Below are positions 7,636-42,686 of a stretch of 64,000 nucleotides of DNA, one piece after another. The DNA lies in the IMG/VR virus record IMGVR_UViG_3300034073_003340, positions 371,857 through 435,856 of that record; one strand, given 5' to 3'. The translations under genes and the position numbers were made by a program. Positions within the stretch are counted from its first letter, which is position 1, and each line of letters begins with the position of its first letter. The notes below the pieces were generated by a model. The model was not told where the DNA came from. It ran no database searches and was given only the letters and a program-made list of their open reading frames with translations.

Positions 7636-7922
7636 GAGAACTTGGCCTCGAACTCCTGAGCTACCTCGATTCGATCCTTGGGGAAGAACACGGTTGTGAT
7701 GTCGTGCTCGTCCGACGAACGCGAGGTCATGACCTCGATACCATGGCCCTCAATGAAGGCACGAGCCTCATCGCCGATCACCCAATGAAAGGTGTCCGGC
7801 CACTTGTGATCCGTTTCCTTCTTCATATGAGCGAAGCCGACCATGCGTACGGGAATACACAGGGCCTGCTTCGCCCGTATGCGCTCAAAAGCGGACATGA
7901 TCTCGGCGTGACGGTCGGTCAT
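7632..7922 (-). CDS. Small hypothetical protein, possible divergent FKL-family member
   Basis: Coupled ORF; ends VFFPKDRIEVAQEFEAKFS. Confidence 0.65.
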   Translation of the reverse strand: MTDRHAEIMSAFERIRAKQALCIPVRMVGFAHMKKETDHKWPDTFHWVIGDEARAFIEGHGIEVMTSRSSDEHDITTVFFPKDRIEVAQEFEAKFS

Positions 7923-9055
7923 GCTTCGATCGCCAGCAGTTCTTCCTTGGTTCGCGTAAACCGACTGAATACCCAGGCATTCTCCAGCATCCGCAGCCGC
8001 TGACCCATGGCCGGGCCAGGCTTCATACCCAGTGCCAGCAGATCCTTACCCGTTACCGGGAAAGTGGGAACCTTGAACGCCTCGGCATGACGTGCCAGCG
8101 AGGGCTCGCCTGCGATCTCCAGCATGGAAACCACATGATCCAGGGGGAACTTGTCGCGAGTCAGCATAACCTCAACCCGCTCTTCGGTCCAGTTCAGACC
8201 GCGATTGCGAATCAGGTTGCGCACCTTGGCTTCTTCGGCACTGCTCATCTTCCAAAACTTGAAGAAGTTCTCTTCATCGGTGTTGGCGATCAGCGTCGAC
8301 AGAGCAGCAACCGCATCATCCGACCGAGCCAGCTCAACGGGGTTGAACCGGAAAACACCCAGCGCACGATTGACGCCGGTCTTGAACATCGCGTCAACGA
8401 TCCGAACCCGAGCCGGCATCTTGGGATCCAGCAGCTTGCTCATTTCCTGCCAAAAACGCTCCACACTGACAAGGTTCAGTTTGTCCAGAACTTCGGCATC
8501 GCTGAACAGATCCAGATCGTCCTGGCTCATCGTGCTGTCGAAACGAGCAGCAAAGCGGAAGTAGCGCAGAATACGCAGGTAATCTTCCTGGACTCGCAGT
8601 TCCGAAACACCAACAAAGCGCACAACCTTGTTCTTCAGATCCTCGCGACCACCAAAGTAGTCGTAAACCAGACCGTTGAAGTCCATGCTCATTGCGTTGA
8701 TGGTCAGGTCGCGACGCTCAGCATCAATTTCGAAGCTGCGAGTAAACTCAACCTCGGCATGTCGACCGTCAGTCTCGACATCCACGCGCAGGGTGGTGAC
8801 CTCAAATGCTTCGCCGTCCACGACCAGCGTTGCCGTGCCGTGCTGGACACCGGTGGCAATGAAACCAAACTTGTTGGTGTTAGCAATAGCTTTCATTTCG
8901 TCCGGAGTAGCATCGGTGCAGAAGTCCACATCCTTGGGGACCACACCCAGCAGAGCGTCACGGACGCAACCACCAACAAAGCGGATCTCGAAACCGGCAG
9001 AAGAAAATGCTTCTCCCAGCTTGCGCGTTTCCGGTGTCATCAGCTTGTCCAGCAC
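7919..9055 (-). CDS. cca: Class II tRNA nucleotidyltransferase (CCA-adding enzyme)
   Basis: VGGCVRD, DVDFCT (DxD), EVTTLR, GRHAEV flexible loop, DAERRDLTINAM, GGREDL and EDYLRILRYFRF; no HD domain; GAGGAG RBS with GTG start. Confidence 0.92.
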   Translation of the reverse strand: MLDKLMTPETRKLGEAFSSAGFEIRFVGGCVRDALLGVVPKDVDFCTDATPDEMKAIANTNKFGFIATGVQHGTATLVVDGEAFEVTTLRVDVETDGRHAEVEFTRSFEIDAERRDLTINAMSMDFNGLVYDYFGGREDLKNKVVRFVGVSELRVQEDYLRILRYFRFAARFDSTMSQDDLDLFSDAEVLDKLNLVSVERFWQEMSKLLDPKMPARVRIVDAMFKTGVNRALGVFRFNPVELARSDDAVAALSTLIANTDEENFFKFWKMSSAEEAKVRNLIRNRGLNWTEERVEVMLTRDKFPLDHVVSMLEIAGEPSLARHAEAFKVPTFPVTGKDLLALGMKPGPAMGQRLRMLENAWVFSRFTRTKEELLAIEA

Positions 9056-24438: not shown

Positions 24439-26754
24439 TCAAAGTTTACAACTGTCGCAATCATCTTCCTGTAGAAGCTCAAGATCCTCGTCTTCTACCA
24501 GCTTTTCACTTTCAATAGTCTGGATTGCTGCCGCATCTTCCTGACCATCATATGTGTTAAAGTAGTACAAATTCTTCCCGCCATACTTGTAAAAGGTAAG
24601 AAGATCCATGATCATTTCCTTCATGGAAATCTCACGATCAGGATAATGATCAGGATTGTAGCTGGTGTTTACACTTGCGCTCTGGTCAATATACTTGAGT
24701 AAAACACACGACACCTTCAAGTAACCACGCGGACTCTTCTGATCCCAGAGAAGCTCATACTTGTTCTTCAGCTTACCAATCTCAGGAACAACCTGCTTGA
24801 GAATACCATGCTTGGAAACTTTTTCAGAAACCAAAGCTCTTACTGGTTCAATACCATTCGTGCTGTTTGATAGCTGAGCTGAAGTTTCAGCAGGCATCAA
24901 GGCCATCAGCGTTGTGTTGCGGATGCTTGTTTCCAATAGCTGCTGACGGAGATCATCCCAAGGCATGCGAAGCTTTGGCACAACTAATTCATCAACGTCG
25001 CTTTTGTAGGTATCAATTGGCAAAATACCCTTGCTGTATTTGCTCATGTGAGCACCCGAACAGGCACCCTTTTCCACTGCCAAATCAGCCGAGGCTTTGA
25101 TCAGATAATAAGCCATTCCTTCCATATATTCATCAATAATTGGAAGGGCAGCATCGTCATATTTCAAGCCGTTCTTAGCAAGAAAATAAGCCAGATTGAT
25201 AATACCCACACCAAGTGGTCTTAACTCCTTGGTGGCTAGCTCTGCGGCTTTAACTGGATAGTTCTGATAGCTAAGGATTTCATCCAAGAATCTAACCACC
25301 AACTTGGCCGGCTTTTCAAAATCATGTGGAGACTTAACTCTTCCCCAGTTCAAAGCACTCAACGTACAAAGGCTGATTCGTCCATCTGGATCATCATGAA
25401 ACTGCATGGGACGAGTAGGGAGGGTAATCTCTTGACAAAGATTGCTCTGTGTGATCGGAGCCAACTTGGGTAGATAGCTACCATGAGTGTTGGCGTGATC
25501 AATGTTCATGAGATAGATGCGACCAGTTTCCTTGCGCTCGGTCAAGAACGCAATGAACACATCTAAAGCCTTCATGGAATGCTTGCGAATCGAGGGATCG
25601 TTTTCATACTTGACATATAGACGATCAAACTCGTCCTGGTCCGCATAAAAGGCATCAAGAAGACCAGGAACGTCTCTGGGTGAAAAGAAGGTAATATCTC
25701 CACCTTCGACCAAACGCTGATACATCATGCGGTTGAATAGAAAGCTATAATCCAACTGACGAATACGATTGAATTCAGTTCCCTTATTGTTTTTGAGAAC
25801 CACCAGGCTTGGGAATTCAAAGTGCCATAGTGGGAAGTGAACGGTGGCAGCACCACCGCGAACACCACCCTGTGAGCAGCTCTTGACCGCAGCCTGCATC
25901 CAACGCAGGAATGGCAGAAGACCAGTATGCTCAGCATCACCATTGCGAATCTTAGATCCCAATGCGCGGATACGGCTCATGTCAATACCAAGACCGGCCT
26001 TTTGACTGATATACTTTACCACACTAACGTTGGTGGCAGCCAAGCTATCAAGAGAGTCATCAGTTGAAATGGTCACGCACGAGCTGAATTGCTTTTGTGG
26101 AGTTCGTAGACCGGCCATGATAGGAGTCGGTAGACTGATATCAAACTGACTGATGCTATCGTAGAAATCCTTGATGTATTCCATACGAGTGTCAGCAGGA
26201 TAAGACATAAAGCCCAGAGCGCTAATCAGAACTAGAGCAATCTGTGGAGTTTCAAAAAATTGGCCAGTGACACGATCCTTTACCAGGTATTTTCCTCGCC
26301 ACTGTTCCATTCCAGCATATGCTATTAGATCATCGCGAGAATGCTTGACGATTTTCTCAATCTTTTTCCAATCGTCCTCGCTGAAATTGTCTAGAAGTTC
26401 CTGAGTATAATGACCAAGCGCCACATTATGCTCAACTACCTGCTTGACCGTCCAAGGTTCATATCGACCATAGACTTCTTTTCTCAATTGATAGCTAGCT
26501 AGACGACTGGCCACGAACTGATAGTTGGGAGTTTCTTCACTAATCAGTTCACTTGCGCTCTTTACCAAGAGCTCATGAATATCAGTGCTGCGGACGCCAT
26601 CTTCTAGCTGAAGTTGAGCTCTCAACTCAACCTCAGACGGGGAAACCCCCGTCAGATCTTCGCACGCCCAAAACACAACCTTATGAATTTTTTCGAGGTT
26701 CAAAGCCTCTCTTCGACCGTCACGCTTGACGACCATAATTGGTGTGTTGCCCAT
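24439..26754 (-). CDS. nrdA: Class Ia ribonucleotide reductase alpha subunit with ATP cone
   Basis: VVKRDG ATP cone, PTPIMAG, QFSSC, SQGGVRGG, QSNLCQEI, CTLSALN and C-terminal CDSCKL. Confidence 0.97.
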   Translation of the reverse strand: MGNTPIMVVKRDGRREALNLEKIHKVVFWACEDLTGVSPSEVELRAQLQLEDGVRSTDIHELLVKSASELISEETPNYQFVASRLASYQLRKEVYGRYEPWTVKQVVEHNVALGHYTQELLDNFSEDDWKKIEKIVKHSRDDLIAYAGMEQWRGKYLVKDRVTGQFFETPQIALVLISALGFMSYPADTRMEYIKDFYDSISQFDISLPTPIMAGLRTPQKQFSSCVTISTDDSLDSLAATNVSVVKYISQKAGLGIDMSRIRALGSKIRNGDAEHTGLLPFLRWMQAAVKSCSQGGVRGGAATVHFPLWHFEFPSLVVLKNNKGTEFNRIRQLDYSFLFNRMMYQRLVEGGDITFFSPRDVPGLLDAFYADQDEFDRLYVKYENDPSIRKHSMKALDVFIAFLTERKETGRIYLMNIDHANTHGSYLPKLAPITQSNLCQEITLPTRPMQFHDDPDGRISLCTLSALNWGRVKSPHDFEKPAKLVVRFLDEILSYQNYPVKAAELATKELRPLGVGIINLAYFLAKNGLKYDDAALPIIDEYMEGMAYYLIKASADLAVEKGACSGAHMSKYSKGILPIDTYKSDVDELVVPKLRMPWDDLRQQLLETSIRNTTLMALMPAETSAQLSNSTNGIEPVRALVSEKVSKHGILKQVVPEIGKLKNKYELLWDQKSPRGYLKVSCVLLKYIDQSASVNTSYNPDHYPDREISMKEMIMDLLTFYKYGGKNLYYFNTYDGQEDAAAIQTIESEKLVEDEDLELLQEDDCDSCKL

Positions 26755-29171: not shown

Positions 29172-30821
29172 TTAGCGCTCTGAGACCTTCTTTGTGATCA
29201 CCTTTGGTGAGGTTTTCTTATTGGAGCGGGCATCGTTATCAAATTCCTCAAGAGAACCATATTCAAATTCAGCTTGTTTGATTATTTCACCATCAAGTTT
29301 GGGATCTCCAAATAGTTTTGCGCAAACTGCTTTGATGACCTGATTGATGTGGGACTGTGGGTTTCTCTTGATGGTTGCCCTCACGACTCTCAGCGCATGG
29401 GCTATCTGTCCTACCGTAAGCTTATAGCCTTTCATCATGCGTTCATTGACTTCTTCATCTTGGGTCTCGGCATGAATAGCTTCAAAAAAGCCCTTAGACA
29501 GCTCTTCTAGGCGTGCTCTGGTTTCGTGGACTGTAGGTGTAGAGGAAACCGGAGAGGCCCCGTGACGGACTCCTGCGAGTCTCTGAGCTTCCATGATTTG
29601 CTGTTGGAAGAATACTTCCTCGGTAGTCTCATCAACAATTTCTTCAACAGTTTCAGAATTAGCATCTTCATAGAACTGACGATACTCACCGATGGGCAAG
29701 ACGTCGATGCCAAGAACATAGGCACCTTCTGACAATGATACGGGGATGGTTCCTGCGGATACTTGGGCAGCAACAGCGCGGGCCGAGCCATAATCAGCAA
29801 AACCTTCTTGGACTAGAATCGTTTCAGTCCCAGCGGTTGCCCAGCTTGGATTCACAGCCGAACCAATGTTCTCCATGATCTGCGTGTGGACGACGACCAC
29901 AAAATTATTGGCTTCCATTACTGCTTCCTCCTCTGATAGTTCTTCTTCAATGCCGGCCTCACAAACAGGGAGGTCCAAATTATCATCAAACAGATCAACA
30001 TCAGGTCTGTTATTTTCCTGAATAGTATCTTCATAGAACTGGTCCTCCACATCGGTAAGGAGGGCATCAGTCTCCATGATATATTTCAAAGCACGAGCAC
30101 GAAATTCATCTTCAGACAATAGACCGAAATCGTGCATATAGGGTGTTCCCTGATAGTGCTTATAGCCCAGACTCAACACGGTGTTGACATCAGCACCCTC
30201 GCCTAGACCACCCCATTCAAGACATTCCTGTAGGTCTCCACGGTTCAAGCCTTCAGCTATTTCACTTAGACCTTCTGCTAGGCTTTCTGAGACTTTTCGA
30301 GCCACCATGATTGGGCTTTTGATGTTTTTGCCCAATAAGCCGCGCCTTTTGAAATCAGCATATGTTTCTTGGCGAGCCAACATCGCATGACTTTTAGAAG
30401 CACTAAAAGCAATGACCTGAAAATGCTCCATGTCAAATTCAGTACAGCCGCCATACATCGTTGTTGGCTTAAAGGTTACGCTCTTGAAAGCTTTGATGGC
30501 TTCATTTTTGTTAGAGTAACCCAACATGACTTTGTCTTCATCAAACTTGGATCCATCAACAGTCATTTGGTGCATGACGTATACTTTGGCATCCTTCTTT
30601 GGATTCTTCCTGACATAACAATCCAAATGCTCACCATCTGGACTGTGTGTTCCTTTGATATAACCATAGTGGGCCGGTACCTTGACTGCCCATTCCTCAC
30701 CAGTCTTTTTGTTTTTGCCTCTTCTGAATCCGTCGGCAGGAACTTCAATGCTAATATCCAGTCCTTCGAAGTTCATATGGCGGTGAAGCTTGGCTTCATT
30801 AAGGCTTCTAATAAAGTCCAT
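29172..30821 (-). CDS. Probable internal virion protein with N-terminal inorganic-pyrophosphatase-like (InPase) domain
   Basis: HYGYIKGTHSPDGEHLDCYV...FDEDKVMLGY PPase-fold motif, followed by an acidic region. Start set at MDF (TAATG overlap). Confidence 0.75.
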   Translation of the reverse strand: MDFIRSLNEAKLHRHMNFEGLDISIEVPADGFRRGKNKKTGEEWAVKVPAHYGYIKGTHSPDGEHLDCYVRKNPKKDAKVYVMHQMTVDGSKFDEDKVMLGYSNKNEAIKAFKSVTFKPTTMYGGCTEFDMEHFQVIAFSASKSHAMLARQETYADFKRRGLLGKNIKSPIMVARKVSESLAEGLSEIAEGLNRGDLQECLEWGGLGEGADVNTVLSLGYKHYQGTPYMHDFGLLSEDEFRARALKYIMETDALLTDVEDQFYEDTIQENNRPDVDLFDDNLDLPVCEAGIEEELSEEEAVMEANNFVVVVHTQIMENIGSAVNPSWATAGTETILVQEGFADYGSARAVAAQVSAGTIPVSLSEGAYVLGIDVLPIGEYRQFYEDANSETVEEIVDETTEEVFFQQQIMEAQRLAGVRHGASPVSSTPTVHETRARLEELSKGFFEAIHAETQDEEVNERMMKGYKLTVGQIAHALRVVRATIKRNPQSHINQVIKAVCAKLFGDPKLDGEIIKQAEFEYGSLEEFDNDARSNKKTSPKVITKKVSER

Positions 30822-31171
30822 TACCAGAGTATCCTCCATTTAAAGGTGTTACCAGTGTTGGCCTTCAGGGGTGTCACTTGATAACCTAGATCCACAAATG
30901 TCTTGCGGACGATGTTAATCTGTTCGGTCAAAGTTCTGATGTTGACATCGGTGAAAAGAGTTGCGAAATAGTCGCTTGGATCAATCACATCTTCATTTTG
31001 GTAATTCACATCCAATGGATTTGTCATTGGACTATTTGAAATTTCAACCTCATATTCGCCCTGTTCTATCGCTTGATAGATTGCTTGCTCGATGGCTCTG
31101 ATTTCCGCGTGAATGATTAGATTATTGCGGGAACCTGCTCTTGCTTCTGCTGCGGTAGGAAAGGTGCTCAT
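30821..31171 (-). CDS. Late hypothetical (virion) protein
   Basis: Coupled ORF in the late block; ends TFKWRILW. Confidence 0.7.
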   Translation of the reverse strand: MSTFPTAAEARAGSRNNLIIHAEIRAIEQAIYQAIEQGEYEVEISNSPMTNPLDVNYQNEDVIDPSDYFATLFTDVNIRTLTEQINIVRKTFVDLGYQVTPLKANTGNTFKWRILW

Positions 31172-34172: not shown

Positions 34173-34880
34173 TCAACGGAGAGATTCTAATATGCTCTTG
34201 ATTTGATCCTGGGCTACCAGAGCATTGGCTTTTGCCACATTGAATCTATTTTTGAAAACTTCGGCCGCCGCCGTTTCGTTCAATTCCATAGAACGAGTAT
34301 AGCGAGCTTTATGCTTTGCCGTTTCAAGACGATTTCGATTAAAATCTTCTTCCAAATCAATAACTTCTTGAACTCTAGAAGAATCAAAGCTCAAACCTTT
34401 GTTCATAAGCTTCATAATAGCTTGAGCTGACTCCTGAAGTCTCAGATTGCTCACAACATCGCGACGATTACTATCCACTACATTGTAGGTTCTAATCTCT
34501 TTGCCATTGCTCTCTTTTAGAGAGATCAGAACTTCAAAAGAACCAGGGCTAGTTTTCTGTGCCAAACTAGTTTCAGTTAGGGTAGTTCGACCAACAGTAG
34601 GGGAAGCCTGTTCTGAAATCTGATCCTCGCCGCTTATGTTGTTGAGTTTGGCAAGGATATTTTTCATAGCATCTATGTCTTCTCGACTAGTGCCAATTGA
34701 AGGAGAGTAATGAGCAGTATTATGACTTTCTCTCAGAGGCTGGTTTCCACCAGTGTAAAAGGCTTGCTGGGGCTGCTGAACGGCCGGAACATTCGTGCCC
34801 TCCATAATGGCTCTCAGTCTGGCCATTTCCTGGATATCTCGAGCACTAGGCATGTTTGAGGGAATTAGATCGTTTGACAT
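34173..34880 (-). CDS. Late hypothetical (probable head) protein
   Basis: 235 aa; MKNILAKL, LRES and LTET motifs. Confidence 0.72.
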   Translation of the reverse strand: MSNDLIPSNMPSARDIQEMARLRAIMEGTNVPAVQQPQQAFYTGGNQPLRESHNTAHYSPSIGTSREDIDAMKNILAKLNNISGEDQISEQASPTVGRTTLTETSLAQKTSPGSFEVLISLKESNGKEIRTYNVVDSNRRDVVSNLRLQESAQAIMKLMNKGLSFDSSRVQEVIDLEEDFNRNRLETAKHKARYTRSMELNETAAAEVFKNRFNVAKANALVAQDQIKSILESLR

Positions 34881-34881
34881 T

Positions 34882-35112
34882 TTATCTCCAAAGGTCCTCT
34901 AGACCACTTACAACATAAAAGAGGGATCCTTCACGTTGGGATCTTTCTAGAATACCCCTACTTACCATCTTTCTAGCAAGCTCTTTCTGTCGCTCATTGA
35001 GATCTTGTCTCTTAATGATTTGGCCTTCTTGTGATTCGATCATATCAAGTAATTCCTGTTCCTCACTGGAAACAGGAATCTGAATTCCGCCTCGAATCTC
35101 TAGAAAACGCAT
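34882..35112 (-). CDS. Small late protein, winged-helix-like
   Basis: MRFLEIRGGIQIPVSSEEQELL...LARKMVSRGILER. Start set at MRFLE, just after the upstream stop. Confidence 0.7.
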   Translation of the reverse strand: MRFLEIRGGIQIPVSSEEQELLDMIESQEGQIIKRQDLNERQKELARKMVSRGILERSQREGSLFYVVSGLEDLWR

Positions 35113-35113
35113 C

Positions 35114-36493
35114 TTACTTCTTGCGACGTTCGCCGAGATAATCACGACCCATCATCTGAGCCTGATTTGTTAGATCCTGAAGCTTCTGGATAAGGGACTT
35201 ATATTCAGAAAGACGAATATCAGCAAGCCCGGCCTGAATACTATTCAGGGCATCTTCAATTTGTGCCATTGCTTCGCTCTGTGAAGGAACGTTACCAACC
35301 GTCATGACCGGATCACTACCAACAGCACCGGGGATACCTGCGTCTGCGGGTAGATCCAAAGTTCCGGTAGTTTCTACATCATCAACTGGAACATCAAAAG
35401 AGAGATCTTCTGGCTCTTCCATCCCACCGTCCATATCGGCCATTGGTTCCTCTACTGGGTCAGCACCAATACCATCTAGTTCCATATCTACAATTTTGTC
35501 ACCTACTGGACCAGCCGCGAGAACGCCTTCGGGATCAATTTCAGGTGCTTCTACGACTTCAATACCGGCAAAGTCGTCGTTTTCTAGTGGTAGACCTGCG
35601 AGTTCGCGCAGGCGGAATAGTGGATTCACTGGCTTCATCATGCCTATCACTCCCTCGTCTAAACGGCTTACTTCTGATTCAGCAACCATTTCTAGTTGAC
35701 CGTTCATGATAACACCGATGGTTCCATTAGGTCCGTGAGGAATTTTGATTTGGCCAACAGCTTCGCCGACCATAACGTCCTCACCAATTTCAAATTCGAT
35801 CTCCTCATCAAAGCGAGGCTTGTGCTTGGCACCGCGTCCAAACTTGTCTACCTTGCGAGGGTCCTTACCGCCATCATGCGCACCAGCACCACTACGGGTC
35901 TTTACCGCTGCGATTACAGGATTACGTGGCTTCATGAGTTCAATCTTTTTCTTGGCGTCTTTGGCGCGCTTTTCTGGCTTCTTGCTCATCTTTTCCTCTA
36001 TTTCAACAGAATCGCGAACTGTCTGCTTTCTAAGGATTTCTGAGAGAGCTCGTCCAGTGCGATATGCCACGTTACGATCACCACATTCAATACGGTAAGC
36101 AACAGGGCTGGTAGCCTGGTATTCTACCTGGTTTTCATCCAACCAGTCAAGAACTCTATCCCTGGTTTGTTCAGAAACCTCAACGGAGTATGAAAATCCT
36201 TCATCAAGTTTTGTCATACATCCGAATGTCTCATCCAGGGTCTCGCCTGAACGTAGACTTTCAAACTTTGCGTTCAGATAATCATCGCTCATTGTGGTTC
36301 TCCCCAGCTTGATACCATATTTACCAAGTAATTTTTCGGCTTCGACCTGGCCCTGATAGGGTCGGCTTGTGTTTTTGAAAGCTTGAACCAAATTCATAAG
36401 GTCATTGCCGTTTACTTCACCTTTGAAGCGCTCAGCAGCTTTTTCGTCTACTCCTCGACGAATCAGTTCATCGGCAATATCCATCTTATCCAT
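35114..36493 (-). CDS. Large acidic late (probable head-internal) protein
   Basis: 459 aa; LDET, LDEG and RLRELAGL motifs. Confidence 0.75.
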   Translation of the reverse strand: MDKMDIADELIRRGVDEKAAERFKGEVNGNDLMNLVQAFKNTSRPYQGQVEAEKLLGKYGIKLGRTTMSDDYLNAKFESLRSGETLDETFGCMTKLDEGFSYSVEVSEQTRDRVLDWLDENQVEYQATSPVAYRIECGDRNVAYRTGRALSEILRKQTVRDSVEIEEKMSKKPEKRAKDAKKKIELMKPRNPVIAAVKTRSGAGAHDGGKDPRKVDKFGRGAKHKPRFDEEIEFEIGEDVMVGEAVGQIKIPHGPNGTIGVIMNGQLEMVAESEVSRLDEGVIGMMKPVNPLFRLRELAGLPLENDDFAGIEVVEAPEIDPEGVLAAGPVGDKIVDMELDGIGADPVEEPMADMDGGMEEPEDLSFDVPVDDVETTGTLDLPADAGIPGAVGSDPVMTVGNVPSQSEAMAQIEDALNSIQAGLADIRLSEYKSLIQKLQDLTNQAQMMGRDYLGERRKK

Positions 36494-36804: not shown

Positions 36805-37050
36805 ATGGGTGATATAATCAAGAGTGTAGTCGAGATGATCGCTAAAGGAGACGGAGGGGCTTTAACGGCTCTTCTCCTTGGTATCATTGGAGTCTTGGGT
36901 TGGTATTGTTTTCGCTTGACCAAGCAATTGGAAAAGAAAGACGAAAAGATTTACAAGATTATCGATGACTATTCAAAAAACAACATTACCATAACTGAAG
37001 CCATGAATGGCCTCAAACTGGTTCTAATTGAGATCAAGGCAAAACTCTAA
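36805..37050 (+). CDS. Small single-TM membrane protein, BhlA-like holin candidate
   Basis: 81 aa; GGGAG RBS; TM ALTALLLGIIGVLGWYCF followed by basic RLTKQLEKKDEKIYKIID and a helical tail, the layout of BhlA-type holins. Confidence 0.55.
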   Translation: MGDIIKSVVEMIAKGDGGALTALLLGIIGVLGWYCFRLTKQLEKKDEKIYKIIDDYSKNNITITEAMNGLKLVLIEIKAKL

Positions 37051-38720
37051 TGATGAAATGGCTGTTTGAAAGCAAAGAAGCTGCTGCCAAACGGACGTTG
37101 CGTGCTGAGACCTTGAAAGCGGCTCTGGAATCCAGTGAAGCTCTTGAAAAAGCCGCCAAAGGAACTTTGGATCTTGCGGCTGATGTAACAGAAACTCTGC
37201 AGGCCAGAATTGATGACTACACGACTCAAATTGATCAGACAGCAAGACTGCTGAATGACGCCCTGATGTTGGTAAGTCCAGAAGGCGAAATACAGAGTTA
37301 TAATCCAGCAGCTGAATCCATGTTTGGCTGGAAAAAGAGGGAAGTAATTGGCAAGAAGATTAGTCTCCTTTTTCAATTCCCAAAAGAAACCGAACTAGAC
37401 GTTAGCTTCATGGAATCTCTGGTAACTCAGGTGAATACCAATGACGAGTTTACCAGTGTAAATTATGAAGATTTCATGGGTATACGAAAAGACGGTAGTA
37501 TCATCTACATAGACGTCTCCGCTAGTAAAGTGGTTCGCAGCGACAAAAAAGTTTACTATATCATGTTGGTCAGAGATGTCACACATCAGGTCAACAATAG
37601 CAAAATGATTCGAGAATTAGCTGAGCATAATCAAGAACTACTCACTACGATTGATGCGTCTAGCACCGGATTTATGATTCTCAATCCAGATGGTTCTGAC
37701 TTCAGTATAAGCTTTGTAAATGAAGGATTTGCCAAGCTTATTGGTTTCAAACGATCCGCTATAAAAAAGATGAATCTCAGGGATCTGTTTGGAACAGATT
37801 CTACCTTCTGGACCATTCGCAGAACTTTGCTTGAAGGTGTTGAAGGACGTCACGAAATACAGTTTGATATCGGGGTCAGCCAGACGGTTGTTTTCGAGGT
37901 CCATTTGACACCAGTGAAGAAGGGACCCAATCCGGTTCAATGGATATTGGTTTTCTATGAAACAACTGAGCTAAAGAAAGCCTATCAAGAACTTGGAAAA
38001 AGCCAAGCTACATTCAAAGCATTCAGTGACGCTAGCTCTGAAAGTTTGATCATCCATGACCATACACGCCTAATGGAATGGAACGACAGGGTCATACTCT
38101 TGACAGGATATTCAGACTCGGAACTTGAAACTATGAATCCTTCTGATTTACTTCATCCTCTTGAAAGAGAGAGAATGTTGTTCAAGAAGAATGAAGTCGA
38201 AGATTCCTCATACGAGACCCTGTTCCTCACCAAGAGCGGTGAAGTAAAGGATGTGGCAATCAACAGTAAGCCAATTGAATGGGACAATACCGAGGCCCGA
38301 ATTGCTATCGTCAGAGACGTCACAGCATTCAAGGATGTAGAAACTCAACTCAAAACATCAAGAGAGCGATATAAGACAGTAGTGGACAACACCATTGATC
38401 TCATTGTTTGCTTTAATAAAGACTTTGAAATTACTTTTTCAAATCAAACATTTCGTGATTACTTTGATGTAGAGGTTGAAGATATAAACGGGTTCAGTCT
38501 CTTGGAGATCATACCTGAGTCAGACCACCAGAAATTCATCAAATATATGTTGGAAGTTCTACCGGGCCAAGAGATTCGCCGCGGAGTTCATAGGGTCAAG
38601 AGACATGACGAGATACGCTGGCAGGACTGGATCGATCGAGGAATTTTTGATGAAGAAGGTATCTTGATAGAAGTTCAAAGCGTCATACGTGACATCACAC
38701 ATCTGATTCCCAGTCAATAA
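37050..38720 (+). CDS. Multi-PAS sensor protein (coiled coil plus four PAS/PAC domains, no output domain)
   Basis: Four units starting YNPAAESMFGW, FVNEGFAKLIGF, WNDRVILLTGY and FSNQTFRDYF and ending VRDVT, FYETT, VRDVT and IRDIT; stops 6 aa after the last PAS; TAATG overlap with the upstream gene. Confidence 0.9.
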   Translation: MMKWLFESKEAAAKRTLRAETLKAALESSEALEKAAKGTLDLAADVTETLQARIDDYTTQIDQTARLLNDALMLVSPEGEIQSYNPAAESMFGWKKREVIGKKISLLFQFPKETELDVSFMESLVTQVNTNDEFTSVNYEDFMGIRKDGSIIYIDVSASKVVRSDKKVYYIMLVRDVTHQVNNSKMIRELAEHNQELLTTIDASSTGFMILNPDGSDFSISFVNEGFAKLIGFKRSAIKKMNLRDLFGTDSTFWTIRRTLLEGVEGRHEIQFDIGVSQTVVFEVHLTPVKKGPNPVQWILVFYETTELKKAYQELGKSQATFKAFSDASSESLIIHDHTRLMEWNDRVILLTGYSDSELETMNPSDLLHPLERERMLFKKNEVEDSSYETLFLTKSGEVKDVAINSKPIEWDNTEARIAIVRDVTAFKDVETQLKTSRERYKTVVDNTIDLIVCFNKDFEITFSNQTFRDYFDVEVEDINGFSLLEIIPESDHQKFIKYMLEVLPGQEIRRGVHRVKRHDEIRWQDWIDRGIFDEEGILIEVQSVIRDITHLIPSQ

Positions 38721-39267: not shown

Positions 39268-39301
39268 AGTGAATTCTCCTATAGAGAGTTTCTGTTAGAA
39301 G

Positions 39302-39307
39302 TATTTA
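39302..39307 (-). promoter_or_regulatory. Late promoter box TAAATA
   Basis: TATTTA 35 nt upstream of the 39267 start. Confidence 0.6.
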
Positions 39308-39321
39308 TCTAAGAGCATCTT

Positions 39322-39513
39322 TTAGCGACGTAAAACTGTTGGTTTGGTATGAGGCTTACGCTTCTTCTCAGCAGCGTCATAGATACCCTTATGCCCATTT
39401 GAATCGAATCCTGCACCAATGGCACCCACCGAGGTTGCCACTGCGCCTGCGGCTGTAGCACCGCTGCTAGCAGTTTCTAAAATTGGTTTACCTACAATCT
39501 CACTCCATCGCAT
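39322..39513 (-). CDS. Small late head-internal-type protein
   Basis: MRWSEIVGKPILETASSGATAAGAVAT, a leader/protease-site pattern. Confidence 0.7.
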   Translation of the reverse strand: MRWSEIVGKPILETASSGATAAGAVATSVGAIGAGFDSNGHKGIYDAAEKKRKPHTKPTVLRR

Positions 39514-39514
39514 A

Positions 39515-40435
39515 TTACAACCTCACACCAAACCGTTTGAGTTCCGCCTTGGGAACTTCTACTTTCAAGTTATTTAAGCGCTCAACATAGATTTTGTAGA
39601 TTTTCAAACGTTCAGGAATCGTATATGTTGATGTCATGGTAACTGATATAGTTTCAAACGACGTCATATAATCCAAAATTTTTGAGGGTAGATGTTGATC
39701 AAAAACCATCTCTACCACTTGTTTTGGATCATCTATAATATCAGTTCTAGCCGGGGTGGCACTTGGGTAAATTTTCAAGAACTCTTCTTTGGTAAGTTCC
39801 TTGAATTCCTTTACTCTCCCGTTGCCGTCCTTGCGCATAGGACGATGTCTATATCTCCAGACACACCCCTTATCATGGAAAAAGGTAGGACCTACTCTGG
39901 CCACCATCTCTCCATTTTCTTCCAACACCCAATCACTATTGAATGCCACTAACGCTTTGATAAGCTCAGTTCTATATAGACCTTTGAGGCAGCTTTTCTT
40001 TGATGTTTGTCCCCAATAATAGAAACCATCGGTATACTCAGGATCGTATTCAGGTGAAAAATAGCTGAACTTCTGCCACTCATAATTGCCAAACATGAAG
40101 TCAACCTGAACATACCCGTTTTTAGGGTCTCCGTTGATCGGAACCGCGGTGAAGATCTGGTTGTTACCAGGGCGAGCCTTGACATACTGTGATCCCAAGA
40201 GAGCAGATAGCTGTTGTGCTACCTTCTCCTGATCATATAGCTCAATTCGCATATTCAGATCAATGTCGCCACTCGTTGGATTCTTACCGGCACTACCAAG
40301 TAGGTGGTTCATGTATTTCCCACCCTGGATGCTTGAATCCTTCCAGTTTCTAGTTAGCCAGTCTAATGTCTTGGGTATGTCCTCTTTGGCGATCCTCTGT
40401 GTAATACCCTCAAACGCCTTACCGCCCATCTTCAA
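39515..40435 (-). CDS. Pol-beta superfamily nucleotidyltransferase
   Basis: LLGSAGKNPTSGDIDL (GS-x(n)-DxD) plus a third Asp in VQVDFM. Confidence 0.78.
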   Translation of the reverse strand: MKMGGKAFEGITQRIAKEDIPKTLDWLTRNWKDSSIQGGKYMNHLLGSAGKNPTSGDIDLNMRIELYDQEKVAQQLSALLGSQYVKARPGNNQIFTAVPINGDPKNGYVQVDFMFGNYEWQKFSYFSPEYDPEYTDGFYYWGQTSKKSCLKGLYRTELIKALVAFNSDWVLEENGEMVARVGPTFFHDKGCVWRYRHRPMRKDGNGRVKEFKELTKEEFLKIYPSATPARTDIIDDPKQVVEMVFDQHLPSKILDYMTSFETISVTMTSTYTIPERLKIYKIYVERLNNLKVEVPKAELKRFGVRL

Positions 40436-41588
40436 TCCTTTTTCTTGTATCGCTGAACATATTCAATGTTCGTTGATGTAATTGTCCCGAATATACTAGT
40501 AATTCTTGCCTGGCTCCGACCCTGTAAACGTGATGTAGAATATGTCGATTGTCTAGATATCGTTTGAGAAGCGTATCTAGTCTTTTCAGACGTTTTTCCT
40601 TGGGCCAGTCTTTGGTTCTAGATAGGAAGCTGGGACGAGCCGGTCTACTGCCTCCTACCAACCAGTATTTGATAAAATGAGTAAAGCGATTGGCCGCCTG
40701 GAATGATTCTCGATCAACTATTTTGAATTTACCCTGATTGCTTTCAACTACGACACCTTCCACAAACGAGCCGGCTCCAATAACACTTGGTTGTTCAAGC
40801 ACTAGAACTCGATAGGCAATATCTTTAAACATCAGAATCATAGATCGGAATACCTGCTTGAGGTCATCGCGTTCCTTTGAAATCTCTTTCTTGAGATCAT
40901 TCCAATTCCGATCACCACATTTGTGATGCTTCTTGGATAGGTTGATATCTAGGATGTCAAAAACGTTGAAGCCTTCAATCCTAGTGTCTTGCTGAAACCA
41001 ATGATCCAATACCGTTCTGAGTTGCTTGGCGTGGGTTGACAGTCTAGCTTGGACCAATTGCCTCGACGTTTGCGGGTTTATAAACGCCAACCACCGTTGC
41101 TTTTCTTTAAAAAGCTCTCTGGAAAATCCATCTGGACTTTGATGGTATTCAACATCAAGCTTACACTTGAAATCGTCAAGGAGCCTTATATGCCCTTCAC
41201 CAAATTCAAAATCAGCAGAAGTGATAATGAGAAGACCGCTGATTGAACTAGATAACAGGTATCGAATAGTATTGGGCATATTACCGTGGATGATTTCAGC
41301 ACCCAATTTCTGCCCAGGCTTGATAAGATTTTCCTTGACTAGGGCTTCAACTATCATAGCACCAACGTTATGGGCAATGCGATAACTCGAAGCCCAGCAT
41401 TCATTTGGCCAATCTTCTACACAATAGCAGAATTGACCTCCCTTGCGGTAACTATAATATCTTCCAGCGTCGTCTAAACCAAATCCCAAGAAGCTACCGT
41501 CAAGCTTTTCGCTCGGCCACCACATTAAGTCAAGGCTATCATATATGGCCCTGGCACTTAGTTCTTCATAATGGGGAATACTAACCAT
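40419..41588 (-). CDS. ATP-dependent ligase-fold (covalent nucleotidyltransferase) protein
   Basis: SEKLDGS (motif I KxDG), GAEIIHG (III), VEGVV (IV) and KFKIVD (V). Confidence 0.72.
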   Translation of the reverse strand: MVSIPHYEELSARAIYDSLDLMWWPSEKLDGSFLGFGLDDAGRYYSYRKGGQFCYCVEDWPNECWASSYRIAHNVGAMIVEALVKENLIKPGQKLGAEIIHGNMPNTIRYLLSSSISGLLIITSADFEFGEGHIRLLDDFKCKLDVEYHQSPDGFSRELFKEKQRWLAFINPQTSRQLVQARLSTHAKQLRTVLDHWFQQDTRIEGFNVFDILDINLSKKHHKCGDRNWNDLKKEISKERDDLKQVFRSMILMFKDIAYRVLVLEQPSVIGAGSFVEGVVVESNQGKFKIVDRESFQAANRFTHFIKYWLVGGSRPARPSFLSRTKDWPKEKRLKRLDTLLKRYLDNRHILHHVYRVGARQELLVYSGQLHQRTLNMFSDTRKRIEDGR

Positions 41589-41630
41589 CCTCTGGCTCTA
41601 GCATACCAGAGGATCGGTTCGCATTATTTA
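41587..41630 (-). promoter_or_regulatory. Late promoter box plus leader hairpin covering the start codon
   Basis: TAAATA at 41630-41625 overlaps the upstream stop; stem ATCCTCTGG/CCAGAGGAT includes the AT of ATG 41588. Confidence 0.55.
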
Positions 41631-42686
41631 GGTTCTAGAACGTAGAAGCGCATATCCAATTCTCGCCAATACATCAATGTCGCTATCCTGCATACGACCA
41701 TATCCTTTGTCAGCAGTATCTTTGACATATTGGGTAATCTGCTTGAGCTTGGAATCGCCGATCTCTAGCTCTCGCTTGAGAATACTAGACATCTCAGTTA
41801 TATCATATGGGCCCACCGAGGTGGATTTATCAGAACTCTTTTTAGACGATGAACCCTGTGACATTTTTTGGCTTGCTAAATCTGCCATAGCATCAGCAGT
41901 GTCGTTGACAGGACCATTCAATAGATATTCATCATTGATATGACCTGCGCTGGCATCCATGAGTTCATCAACGACCTCATCATCCAACACCTCTGAATCA
42001 GATTCCATGATAGATTCAACGTTGGTTTGTGGGTTTTGAGGCTTACCAACTGAACGGGAAAACGACGCTTTGCCGAGAATCAGTTTGTCTCCCACTGGCA
42101 TATTGGCCAATTTTGCTGAAATTTTCTCACGATCCCATTCGCCATTTGATAAGCGATAGTCTTTGGGATCCGCTTTGATTTCACCATGATCCTTTTTGCC
42201 ATCGTCTTTTTCAACATCAATACCGACCTTGCCAAAATCACTAAGCTTGGTATTCAAGTCTTTGGGAATAGGGACACCGTCTTCTTTTTCAGCAGCAGAT
42301 TTCTGGTCCTTGTCTACTTCACCACCTCGAGCTATTTTGCGCTCAGGAGGAGATTGGTCTGGCGAGTCAGAAGAGTCAGCTACCTCAGGAGACTTAGATT
42401 TATCAAAAACTTTGTCTTTGACAATGGCAACATCTTTGTCAGAAAATCCAATGCGTGCTCGCATAAAGCGATCCATGTCATCGTCAGTTCCTTGACGTCC
42501 CGTCTGACCAAGCCATTTCAGCCATTCCTGCTTGAGACGATGTGCCATTTCGGCTCGCTCTTTACTACCAAGACGACGGATTCGCTTATTCTTGAGATTG
42601 GTGAGCCATCCTTCAAGGAGAACTGGCTCCTGCGTGCTTTCTACAAGGCTCATAAGGCGGCGGATGTCAGAACTATTATTTGCCAC
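41628..42686 (-). CDS. Late head-internal-type protein
   Basis: MANNSSDIRRLMSLVESTQEPVLLEG leader; charged low-complexity middle. Confidence 0.75.
   Translation of the reverse strand: MANNSSDIRRLMSLVESTQEPVLLEGWLTNLKNKRIRRLGSKERAEMAHRLKQEWLKWLGQTGRQGTDDDMDRFMRARIGFSDKDVAIVKDKVFDKSKSPEVADSSDSPDQSPPERKIARGGEVDKDQKSAAEKEDGVPIPKDLNTKLSDFGKVGIDVEKDDGKKDHGEIKADPKDYRLSNGEWDREKISAKLANMPVGDKLILGKASFSRSVGKPQNPQTNVESIMESDSEVLDDEVVDELMDASAGHINDEYLLNGPVNDTADAMADLASQKMSQGSSSKKSSDKSTSVGPYDITEMSSILKRELEIGDSKLKQITQYVKDTADKGYGRMQDSDIDVLARIGYALLRSRT

What the first reader, a model, noticed from the sequence alone, without database searches (positions are those of the whole stretch)
39515..41588. Overlapping ligase-fold and Pol-beta nucleotidyltransferase genes inside the virion block
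Both keep full catalytic sets (KxDG plus motifs III, IV and V; GS..DxD..D), overlap by 17 nt, follow a late box and are flanked by head-internal-type genes. Two different NMP-transfer folds expressed late suggest a packaged two-enzyme module. Options are RNA end healing and sealing after anticodon-nuclease attack, protein NMPylation of host targets, or synthesis of decoy nucleotide signals.
Basis: partly seen in the sequence, partly recalled or inferred. Interest (0 to 1): 0.66.

Follow-up and report, generated by a model that had tools for sequence, protein, structure and literature searches.

The report
Coupled PolX-like transferase and ligase
Two overlapping genes of a 436-kb phage encode a small DNA-polymerase-X-like nucleotide-adding enzyme and an RNA-ligase-type sealing enzyme; the two are fused or adjacent in many other phages, so they most likely patch and reseal broken nucleic acid, and the first enzyme travels inside the virus particle in two cultured relatives.

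Summary
Gene A (40419-41588, minus strand) is a ligase-fold enzyme with invariant motifs I, III, IV and V. Its closest solved structures are RNA ligases, and it has no OB domain. Gene B (39515-40429, minus strand) is a Pol-beta nucleotidyltransferase whose palm plus thumb best match family X DNA polymerases. The overlap is probably 11 nt, from a conserved ATG, rather than 17 nt.

Neither protein passes any Pfam or PHROG threshold. A is a distant relative of the uncharacterised DUF6267. B belongs to a family of at least 1,400 clusters at 50% identity.

The two are functionally coupled. Of 80 viral loci carrying B, 37 have it fused to a ligase-like domain, in either order, and 27 have such a gene adjacent or within 4 kb.

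Published virion proteomics found the B homologue in Agrobacterium phage Atu_ph07 and Pseudomonas phage PA5oct. The A homologue was found in neither. "Packaged two-enzyme module" is therefore only half supported.

My best reading is an extend-and-seal repair pair acting on nicked or gapped duplex nucleic acid. I lean towards the injected phage genome as substrate, by analogy with virus PolX-ligase systems. RNA (tRNA) repair of the RlaP-plus-ligase type is a close rival. The substrate is unresolved without biochemistry.

The parts
40419..41588 (-). Gene A, 389 aa. A ligase-fold covalent nucleotidyltransferase of RNA-ligase type, with a roughly 150-residue insertion (about residues 125-270) and a basic helical C-terminal domain (292-389). 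It has no OB domain.
41496..41510 (-). Motif I of A, E27-K28-L-D30-G31. K28 is the predicted AMP-accepting lysine.
   Evidence: Invariant in alignments A1 and A3. Codons read directly from the sequence.
40722..40760 (-). Motifs IV and V of A, from E277-G278 to F288-K289.
   Evidence: Invariant. This same stretch gives the weak DUF6267 match.
39515..40429 (-). Gene B, 304 aa from the conserved ATG (306 aa from the TTG at 40435). A minimal family-X-polymerase-like Pol-beta nucleotidyltransferase with palm and thumb, plus extra C-terminal helices.
40259..40297 (-). Catalytic G47-S48 ... G56-D57-I-D59 of B. Residue numbers follow the 306-aa ORF.
   Evidence: Invariant in 47 homologues. Codons checked against the sequence.
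40100..40102 (-). Third catalytic carboxylate of B, D112, in the stretch V-Q-V-D-F-M-F.
   Evidence: Q110, D112, M114 and F115 are invariant.
40419..40429 (-). The 11-nt overlap between the start of B and the stop of A, with an AAGGA ribosome-binding site at 40436-40440. This is a translational-coupling arrangement.
   Evidence: Sequence. The same overlapping arrangement occurs in Phosso, Atu_ph07 and 14 metagenomic relatives.
41625..41630 (-). TAAATA promoter-like box, preceded by C, 42 nt upstream of A's ATG. It overlaps the stop codon of the upstream gene.
   Evidence: A CTAAAT-type box sits at the same relative place in relatives.
41587..41614 (-). Stable stem-loop of 10 bp plus extensions that encloses A's Shine-Dalgarno sequence and the first bases of its AUG.
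   Evidence: MFE -25.3 kcal/mol, z -6.3. Scored as terminator-like. Hairpins with different stem sequences at the same place in at least 10 relatives, with a conserved UGCUA in the loop. It is among the 7 most stable 5' regions of 639 genes.
39322..39513 (-). A 63-aa ORF that starts 1 nt after B's stop codon (TAAtATG). It is probably the third cistron of the same transcription unit.
   Evidence: It matches the C-terminal end of phrog_12810.

Best explanation
A and B form an extend-and-seal nucleic-acid repair pair.

Proposed mechanism:
- B is a minimal polymerase-X-like enzyme with two-metal chemistry on D57, D59 and D112. It adds one or a few nucleotides to a 3'-OH at a gap or damaged end in a duplex.
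- A is self-adenylylated on K28 from ATP. It transfers AMP to the 5'-phosphate and seals the resulting nick.
- I lean towards the phage's own 436-kb DNA as substrate, at nicks and short gaps present on or just after injection. The patch may end in ribonucleotides, because A is of the RNA-ligase type that in known enzymes needs an RNA 3'-OH strand.
- B is carried in the virion and can act at once. A is made in the cell, or is present at levels below detection.

Shown here: the folds, the conserved catalytic residues, the gene coupling and fusions, and virion presence of B homologues.

Inferred: the chemistry, the substrate, the order of the two steps and the timing.
For: 1. Folds and residues.
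- In the BFVD viral structure library, the first named matches outside B's own family are giant-virus family X polymerases.
- A has a ligase nucleotidyltransferase fold with all catalytic positions invariant.

2. Coupling.
- Of 80 viral loci with B, 37 have B fused to a ligase-like domain (35 to DUF6267, 2 to A), 19 have such a gene directly adjacent and 8 have one within 4 kb.
- Ten further A-B fusion proteins appear among cluster representatives. One protein, P0260, joins B to a canonical ATP-dependent DNA ligase domain, PF01068.
- A structural cluster joins the B fold to a PD-(D/E)XK nuclease.

3. DNA context.
- The order primase, helicase, three small genes, A, B is conserved in Phosso and Atu_ph07.
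- In four Kyanoviridae genomes the homologous DUF6267 gene sits just after the gp41 helicase. It is the only ligase-fold gene found there, with no PF01068, PF01653 or PF09414 hit.

4. B homologues are virion proteins in two different jumbo phages.

5. Precedent.
- A giant-virus PolX fused to a DNA ligase performs gap filling and sealing (PMC5537341).
- ASFV uses a PolX plus a ligase for base excision repair (PMC8450572).

6. Both proteins carry conserved basic segments. In B this is W193-R194-x-R196-x-R198...R207. In A it is a G-G-R-R-P...S-R-T-K stretch and the basic C-terminal helix.

7. The genome already encodes a standard RNA-repair kit elsewhere: a PF09414 RNA ligase, a kinase plus metallophosphatase, and a CCA-adding enzyme.
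Against: - A resembles RNA ligases more than DNA ligases at every level: structure, weak Pfam hits and language-model neighbours. It also lacks the OB domain that all known DNA ligases have.
- The genome already has an NAD-dependent DNA ligase, so redundancy counts against the DNA reading just as it does against the RNA reading.
- No AP endonuclease of either family was found, so a complete ASFV-like excision pathway is absent.
- B has no 8-kDa lyase or helix-hairpin-helix domain and no Pfam PolX match.
- A homologues were not detected in either virion proteome, so the two steps may be separated in time or place.
- In Kyanoviridae the ligase-like domain pairs with a cytidylyltransferase-like domain instead of B. 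That domain acts on small molecules in characterised enzymes.
- The complex prediction gave no support, which is not evidence either way.
Confidence: 0.4

Rival explanations
1. RNA repair of the RlaP-plus-RNA-ligase type. After a host ribonuclease cuts and trims a tRNA or other RNA, B restores one or two nucleotides at the RNA 3'-OH and A joins the halves. This is the closest of the reader's options. End healing would be done by other phage enzymes.
For: - A's best matches are all RNA ligases, and it has no OB domain.
- Pol-beta transferases that travel with RNA ligases are a described class, RlaP (PMC7824862).
- RlaP has been shown to add 1-2 NMPs to damaged RNA 3' ends before ligation (bioRxiv 10.64898/2025.12.29.696909).
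- The phage invests heavily in tRNAs: 59 genes, plus a kinase-phosphatase and a CCA-adding enzyme.
- Jumbo phages often carry several non-redundant RNA ligases (PMC7824862).
Against: - B is not an RlaP. Neither B, its family nor the genome gives a PF10127 match.
- B's second domain follows the PolX thumb rather than RlaP's all-helical domain.
- A canonical RNA ligase is already present.
- The conserved position next to the helicase and primase, the fusion to a DNA-ligase domain and to a PD-(D/E)XK nuclease, and packaging of B with the DNA all fit DNA better.
Confidence: 0.28
2. B is an injected effector that acts on a host target. Candidates are nucleotidylation of a host protein, blocking tRNA 3' ends as MenT toxins do, or making or mimicking a nucleotide signal. 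A would have an accessory or separate role.
For: - B homologues are in virions while A homologues are not.
- B domains occur in large multi-domain proteins with GNAT, ParB/Srx-like and Tad3 (anti-Thoeris) domains. These resemble injected polyvalent proteins (PMC5512222).
Against: - Those structural matches cover only about 100 residues, while PolX matches cover 160-190.
- This reading does not explain the systematic fusion or adjacency with a ligase-fold domain in 64 of 80 loci.
- The conserved basic hairpin and the thumb-like domain suggest a polynucleotide substrate.
Confidence: 0.1
3. The A/DUF6267 superfamily is not a polynucleotide ligase. It would work with nucleotidyltransferases on a nucleotide cofactor or a nucleotide-linked small molecule, for example NAD-related chemistry or a DNA or sugar modification pathway.
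For: - In Kyanoviridae, DUF6267 is fused to a cytidylyltransferase-like (PF01467) domain in S-PM2, or is followed by one in Syn1, P-HM1 and Melnitz-3.
- An Atlas cluster joins the B fold to PF01467.
Against: - To my knowledge, every characterised member of the lysine-NMP ligase/capping fold acts on polynucleotide ends.
- A has a strongly basic conserved C-terminal domain.
- B's fold is polymerase-like.
Confidence: 0.07

Closest known systems
Virus PolX plus DNA ligase repair systems: the Phaeocystis globosa virus PolX-ligase fusion (PMC5537341) and ASFV pO174L PolX with pNP419L ligase (PMC8450572)
   Same: A minimal or compact Pol-beta/X polymerase is functionally coupled, by fusion or co-encoding, to a nick-sealing ligase in a large DNA virus. 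B aligns with ASFV PolX over 161 of its 176 residues. From my own recollection, ASFV repair enzymes are also virion components; I did not check this here.
   Different: The partner ligase here is RNA-ligase-like, without an OB domain, and is neither NAD-dependent nor DNA-ligase-like. No AP endonuclease or lyase domain was found. B shows no sequence-level PolX signal. The host is a bacterium.
RlaP (PF10127) with RNA ligases in RNA repair, including T4 NrdC.11 (PMC7824862; bioRxiv 10.64898/2025.12.29.696909)
   Same: A Pol-beta-superfamily transferase is genomically tied to a 5'-phosphate RNA-ligase-type enzyme in phages. The proposed logic is to add missing nucleotides and then ligate.
   Different: There is no PF10127 match. 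B's second domain is thumb-like with a beta-rich basic segment, where RlaP has a helical domain. Virion packaging and fusion to the ligase are not described for RlaP in the papers I read.
Bacterial LigD, the polymerase-phosphoesterase-ligase enzyme of end joining (from my own knowledge, not tested here)
   Same: A polymerase and an ATP-dependent ligase are joined in one repair unit. LigD patches with ribonucleotides and its ligase prefers a 3'-ribonucleotide nick, which would reconcile a DNA substrate with an RNA-ligase-type sealer.
   Different: The LigD polymerase is an archaeo-eukaryotic primase fold, not Pol-beta. Its ligase has an OB domain. No Ku-like partner was looked for here.
Nick-sealing RNA ligases Rnl2 (T4 Rnl2, TbREL1) and Rnl5 (Naegleria NgrRnl)
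   Different: A does not reach the Pfam threshold. It has a roughly 150-residue insertion and a different, basic helical C-terminal domain. Motif V has one Lys instead of K-x-K.
DUF6267 (PF19782), an uncharacterised phage family
   Same: The conserved motifs fall in the same order: K-W-D-G, an acidic residue, P-N-T-x-x-Y, E-G, then K-x-V-D-R..F...N. Both pair with B-like transferases.
   Different: The match is below threshold (11.6 bits against a cut-off of 27). DUF6267 lacks A's C-terminal domain.

Membership tests
Covalent nucleotidyltransferase (ATP-dependent ligase / capping enzyme) superfamily, for gene A | Motif I K-x-D-G with the nucleophilic lysine | tested here: met
   E27-K28-L-D30-G31 is invariant in 40 homologues and in a divergent set of 13.
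Covalent nucleotidyltransferase superfamily, for gene A | Motifs III, IV and V in order, on the ligase nucleotidyltransferase fold | tested here: met
Covalent nucleotidyltransferase superfamily, for gene A | Formation of a lysyl-AMP intermediate | not testable with these tools
   Needs an [alpha-32P]ATP labelling assay with a K28A control.
ATP-dependent DNA ligases (PF01068 plus OB domain), for gene A | OB-fold domain after the nucleotidyltransferase domain, and a Pfam profile match | tested here: not met
   The C-terminal 292-389 is helical. No PF01068 match in the protein or the genome.
RNA_ligase PF09414 (Rnl2/Rnl5-type), for gene A | Profile match at or above the gathering score | tested here: not met
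   The window protein has no hit at E <= 0.1. 22 of 40 family members give sub-threshold hits, the best at 4.8e-5. Structural and language-model neighbours are of RNA-ligase type. A resembles the family, but membership is not shown.
DUF6267 PF19782, for gene A | Profile match at or above the gathering score (27 bits) | tested here: not met
   11.6 bits, E 0.18. A local hhalign match at motif I has probability 77%. The A profile hits the motif IV-V region of DUF6267 at about 1e-4 to 1e-5. This indicates distant homology.
Family X DNA polymerases, for gene B | Pol-beta palm with G-S, D-x-D and a third Asp | tested here: met
   G47, S48, D57, D59 and D112 are invariant.
Family X DNA polymerases, for gene B | Palm plus thumb two-subdomain core superposable on solved PolX enzymes | tested here: met
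Family X DNA polymerases, for gene B | Sequence-profile membership (PF14792 palm, PF14791 thumb) | tested here: not met
   No Pfam hit for B or any of the 47 family members at E <= 10. Only weak language-model proximity, 0.83 and 0.75.
Family X DNA polymerases, for gene B | 8-kDa dRP-lyase and helix-hairpin-helix fingers subdomains | tested here: not met
   The palm starts at about residue 16 of a 304-aa protein, leaving no room for an N-terminal domain. ASFV PolX lacks these subdomains too.
Family X DNA polymerases, for gene B | Template-directed gap-filling DNA synthesis | not testable with these tools
   Needs primer-extension assays.
RlaP PF10127, for gene B | Profile match, and a nucleotidyltransferase domain followed by an all-helical C-terminal domain | tested here: not met
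   No PF10127 hit in B, its family or the genome. B has a beta-rich segment at 169-214, whereas PfRlaP has a helical domain.
CD-NTase / cGAS-OAS signalling synthases, for gene B | Structural match over the whole catalytic core, including the helical C-terminal lobe | tested here: not met

The most novel reading that the evidence does not exclude
B and A would be a virion-delivered 'first-aid kit' for the injected genome. A packaged minimal PolX-like polymerase fills gaps in the incoming 436-kb DNA, and a dedicated ligase of a previously unrecognised lineage (A/DUF6267) seals them. That lineage is OB-less and RNA-ligase-like. The same lineage would be the long-missing DNA ligase of T4-like cyanophages, where it is the only ligase-fold gene and sits beside the replicative helicase.
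Probability: 0.22. Interest if true: 0.8.

Novelty: new variant of a known kind. Interest (0 to 1): 0.62.

Why it matters
If this reading is right, a very large and unannotated phage protein family gains a testable function: B has at least 1,400 clusters at 50% identity and no Pfam model, and DUF6267 is its partner. It would also show that bacteriophages, like giant eukaryotic viruses, couple a minimal polymerase X to a ligase, and that they carry the polymerase inside the particle. Phage genome repair at the moment of entry is almost unexplored. It bears on how very large phage genomes survive outside the cell and survive host nucleases. The link to DUF6267 would also address why T4-like cyanophages appear to lack a ligase. 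If the substrate turns out to be RNA instead, this is a second, structurally distinct solution to the 'add nucleotides, then ligate' logic of RlaP. Three cultured relatives (Atu_ph07, Phosso, PA5oct) make genetic tests feasible.

Tried and rejected
- Nucleotide search of the phage collection: no match.
- Single-sequence and profile searches of PDB sequences: nothing meaningful for A or B.
- Pfam and PHROG on both proteins: no hits.
- Complex prediction for A plus B scored 0.00, 'no answer'. It is not evidence for or against binding.
- RlaP membership for B: rejected.
- A complete ASFV-like excision pathway: not found. There is no ExoIII-type or EndoIV-type AP endonuclease.
- The idea that A is the phage's only ligase: rejected. 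A LigA-like gene and a PF09414 RNA ligase exist elsewhere.
- RNAalifold on a MAFFT alignment of the 5' regions did not recover the hairpin, because the stems are in different registers. The evidence for the hairpin is therefore per-sequence folding, not a formal covariation count.
- Reads: only assembled contigs were available. One 252-nt contig from a wastewater RNA library covers 39475-39726, which does not prove transcription.
- A sigma-70 promoter reading of the conserved TTGA..N..TGCTA pattern seen in relatives was considered but not supported for the window by the scan.
- Burroughs and Aravind 2016, the original RlaP paper, is not held. It is cited only through PMC7824862.
- No alternative genetic code was used.
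Full report
**What is there**

The window is the last 64 kb of a 435,856-bp virus record with direct terminal repeats. On the minus strand, ORF A (40419-41588, 389 aa) and ORF B (39515-40435, 306 aa) overlap as described.

- All homologues of B start MGGxAF, and the database holds the identical 304-aa form. An AAGGA also lies 6 nt before the ATG at 40429. B therefore most likely starts there, and the overlap is 11 nt rather than 17.
- A 63-aa ORF starts one base after B's stop codon.

Neither protein matches Pfam, PHROGs or PDB sequences, singly or as profiles.

**The catalytic sets are real**

- In 40 homologues of A, down to 33% identity, K28, D30, G31, R48, K49, E98, N106, E277, G278 and K289 are invariant. 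They stay invariant when cultured-phage homologues and fusion proteins are added.
- In 47 homologues of B, G47, S48, G56, D57, D59, Q110 and D112 are invariant.
- Both proteins have strongly conserved basic segments.

**Folds**

AlphaFold models built on these alignments are confident, with pLDDT 94.5 and 94.3.

Gene A:
- A has no OB domain. Its last 100 residues form a helical, basic domain.
- 22 of 40 family members give sub-threshold PF09414 hits, and 20 of 40 give sub-threshold DUF6267 hits.
- Language-model neighbours are RNA-ligase clusters.

Gene B:
- In the viral structure library, the first named matches outside B's own family are giant-virus PolX proteins.
- B has no Pfam PolX signal and no 8-kDa or helix-hairpin-helix domain. 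It is PolX-like in fold, but it is not a demonstrated member of the family.

**Linkage**

The A-then-B arrangement, with overlap, recurs in three places:
- Sinorhizobium phage Phosso (469 kb);
- Agrobacterium phage Atu_ph07 (490 kb);
- 14 metagenomic viral contigs.

Each time it lies downstream of primase, a DnaB-like helicase and three small genes.

More distantly:
- Two contigs encode a 901-aa A-B fusion.
- About 35 contigs encode proteins of roughly 600 aa with a B-like N-terminus and a DUF6267 C-terminus.
- DUF6267 carries the same motif series as A: K-W-D-G, an acidic residue, P-N-T..Y, E-G, then K-x-V-D-R.

Of the 80 loci, 37 are fusions, 19 have a ligase-like gene adjacent, 8 have one within 4 kb, and 16 show none. 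Some contigs are truncated and many are redundant.

An exhaustive profile search finds 1,418 cluster representatives for B. These include:
- ten more A-B fusions;
- fusions with DUF6267 in both orders;
- one fusion to a canonical DNA-ligase domain (PF01068);
- fusions to GNAT and Tad3 domains.

All eight viral loci found with A also carry B.

**Packaging**

The Atu_ph07 virion proteome is in Supplementary Table S5 of PMC6102473.
- It lists gp65, which by size and coordinates is the B homologue, with 10 unique peptides and 36.8% coverage.
- It also lists gp67-69 and gp53-64.
- It does not list gp66 (the A homologue), the helicase or the primase.

In PA5oct, a different jumbo-phage family, the B-like EST35_0231 is annotated 'structural protein, ESI-MS/MS'. 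The A homologue EST35_0228 (E 3e-33 to the A profile) is not.

**Regulatory context**

- A TAAATA box lies 42 nt before A's ATG. The motif is under-represented genome-wide, yet 45% of its copies lie just upstream of genes. Its timing is unknown.
- Between the box and the ORF is a stable hairpin (-25.3 kcal/mol, z -6.3) that buries A's ribosome-binding site and start codon.
- Relatives keep a hairpin at the same place with different stem sequences and a conserved UGCUA loop.
- This hairpin may act as a terminator or as a translational throttle, and could explain low A levels. That is inference.

**Genome context**

Elsewhere the phage encodes:
- a LigA-like ligase;
- a PF09414 RNA ligase, a kinase-metallophosphatase and a CCA-adding enzyme;
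- 59 tRNAs.

No RlaP and no AP endonuclease were found.

**Interpretation**

The recurrent fusion of a polymerase-like transferase to a ligase-fold domain argues that the two act in sequence on one substrate: extend a 3'-OH, then seal. There are two precedents.
- Virus PolX-ligase systems for DNA gap repair (PMC5537341; ASFV, PMC8450572).
- RlaP plus RNA ligase for RNA repair (PMC7824862; bioRxiv 10.64898/2025.12.29.696909).

I lean to DNA at 0.40. The grounds are:
- the PolX-like thumb;
- the fusions to a DNA-ligase domain and to a PD-(D/E)XK nuclease;
- the conserved position next to the replicative helicase;
- the position of DUF6267 beside gp41 in four Kyanoviridae genomes that have no other ligase-fold gene;
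- packaging of B with the DNA.

The RNA-ligase character of A keeps RNA repair close behind, at 0.28. A ribonucleotide-patch mechanism like that of LigD would reconcile the two readings. The effector and small-molecule readings are less likely.

**Novelty**

'Transferase plus ligase' repair units are a known kind of system. What is not described in any paper I could find is:
- these two families themselves;
- the PolX-like nature of B;
- the scale of the coupling;
- the virion location.

Noticed in passing
window 41587-41614 (-), with pairing extending to about 41577-41625: A stable hairpin (-25.3 kcal/mol, z -6.3) encloses gene A's Shine-Dalgarno sequence and AUG. At least 10 relatives keep a hairpin there with different stem sequences and a conserved UGCUA loop. 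It may be a terminator for the upstream virion-protein gene, a translational operator, or both.
   Followed up: partly
whole genome G000; in the window for example 41625-41630, 39302-39307 and upstream of 24439-26754: TAAATA, usually preceded by C, occurs 137 times on both strands, about a third of the number I estimate from base composition. 61 copies lie within 60 nt upstream of a gene start, so it is a likely phage promoter core. It also precedes the ribonucleotide reductase gene, so 'late' is unproven.
   Followed up: partly
L085 (P-HM1), L102 (S-PM2), L103 (Syn1), L104 (Melnitz-3): In Kyanoviridae the DUF6267 gene always lies just downstream of the gp41 primase-helicase. It is fused to, or followed by, a cytidylyltransferase-like PF01467 domain. 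It is the only ligase-fold gene found in these four genomes, which have no PF01068, PF01653 or PF09414 hit. It may be their missing ligase.
   Followed up: partly
P0300, P0186, P0249, P0183, P0260 (proteins): B-like domains occur in large multi-domain proteins: with Tad3 (an anti-Thoeris sponge) plus DUF5661, with GNAT acetyltransferases, three times in one 1,802-aa protein, and with a canonical ATP-dependent DNA ligase domain.
   Followed up: partly
window 29172-30839 (-): A 555-aa protein has an N-terminal InPase domain (PF18823). This pyrophosphatase module is described in injected 'polyvalent proteins' and proposed to clear pyrophosphate for early nucleotidyl-transfer reactions. It could assist a packaged transferase such as B.
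   Followed up: no
window 37050-38720 (+): A 556-aa protein made of four PAS domains is encoded on the opposite strand. A PAS-domain gene sits at the same relative position in Phosso, and Atu_ph07 has a 'multi-sensor histidine kinase' (gp49) in the same block. A conserved sensor-like protein is unexpected inside a virion-gene region.
   Followed up: no
G000:C1:99130-99204 and 293258-293333; tRNA cluster about 292-325 kb: The genome carries 59 tRNA genes, two of them with a CUA anticodon (amber-suppressor-like; ARAGORN labels them Pyl).
   Followed up: no
G000:C1:93170-94495 (-), 34700-35359 (+); window 7919-9055 (-): A standard RNA-repair toolkit is encoded away from the finding: a P-loop kinase fused to a calcineurin-like phosphoesterase (a Pnkp-like healing enzyme), a PF09414 RNA ligase and a class II CCA-adding enzyme.
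   Followed up: partly
window 39322-39513 (-): The 63-aa ORF coupled to B's stop codon matches only the last 50 or so positions of the 788-position profile phrog_12810. It may be a detached C-terminal module of a larger protein found in other phages.
   Followed up: no
window 39300-41700 in public runs: Near-identical sequence occurs in subsurface (the probable source), soil and wastewater metagenomes from several studies. The soil run holds at least two variants at 90-99% identity.
   Followed up: partly
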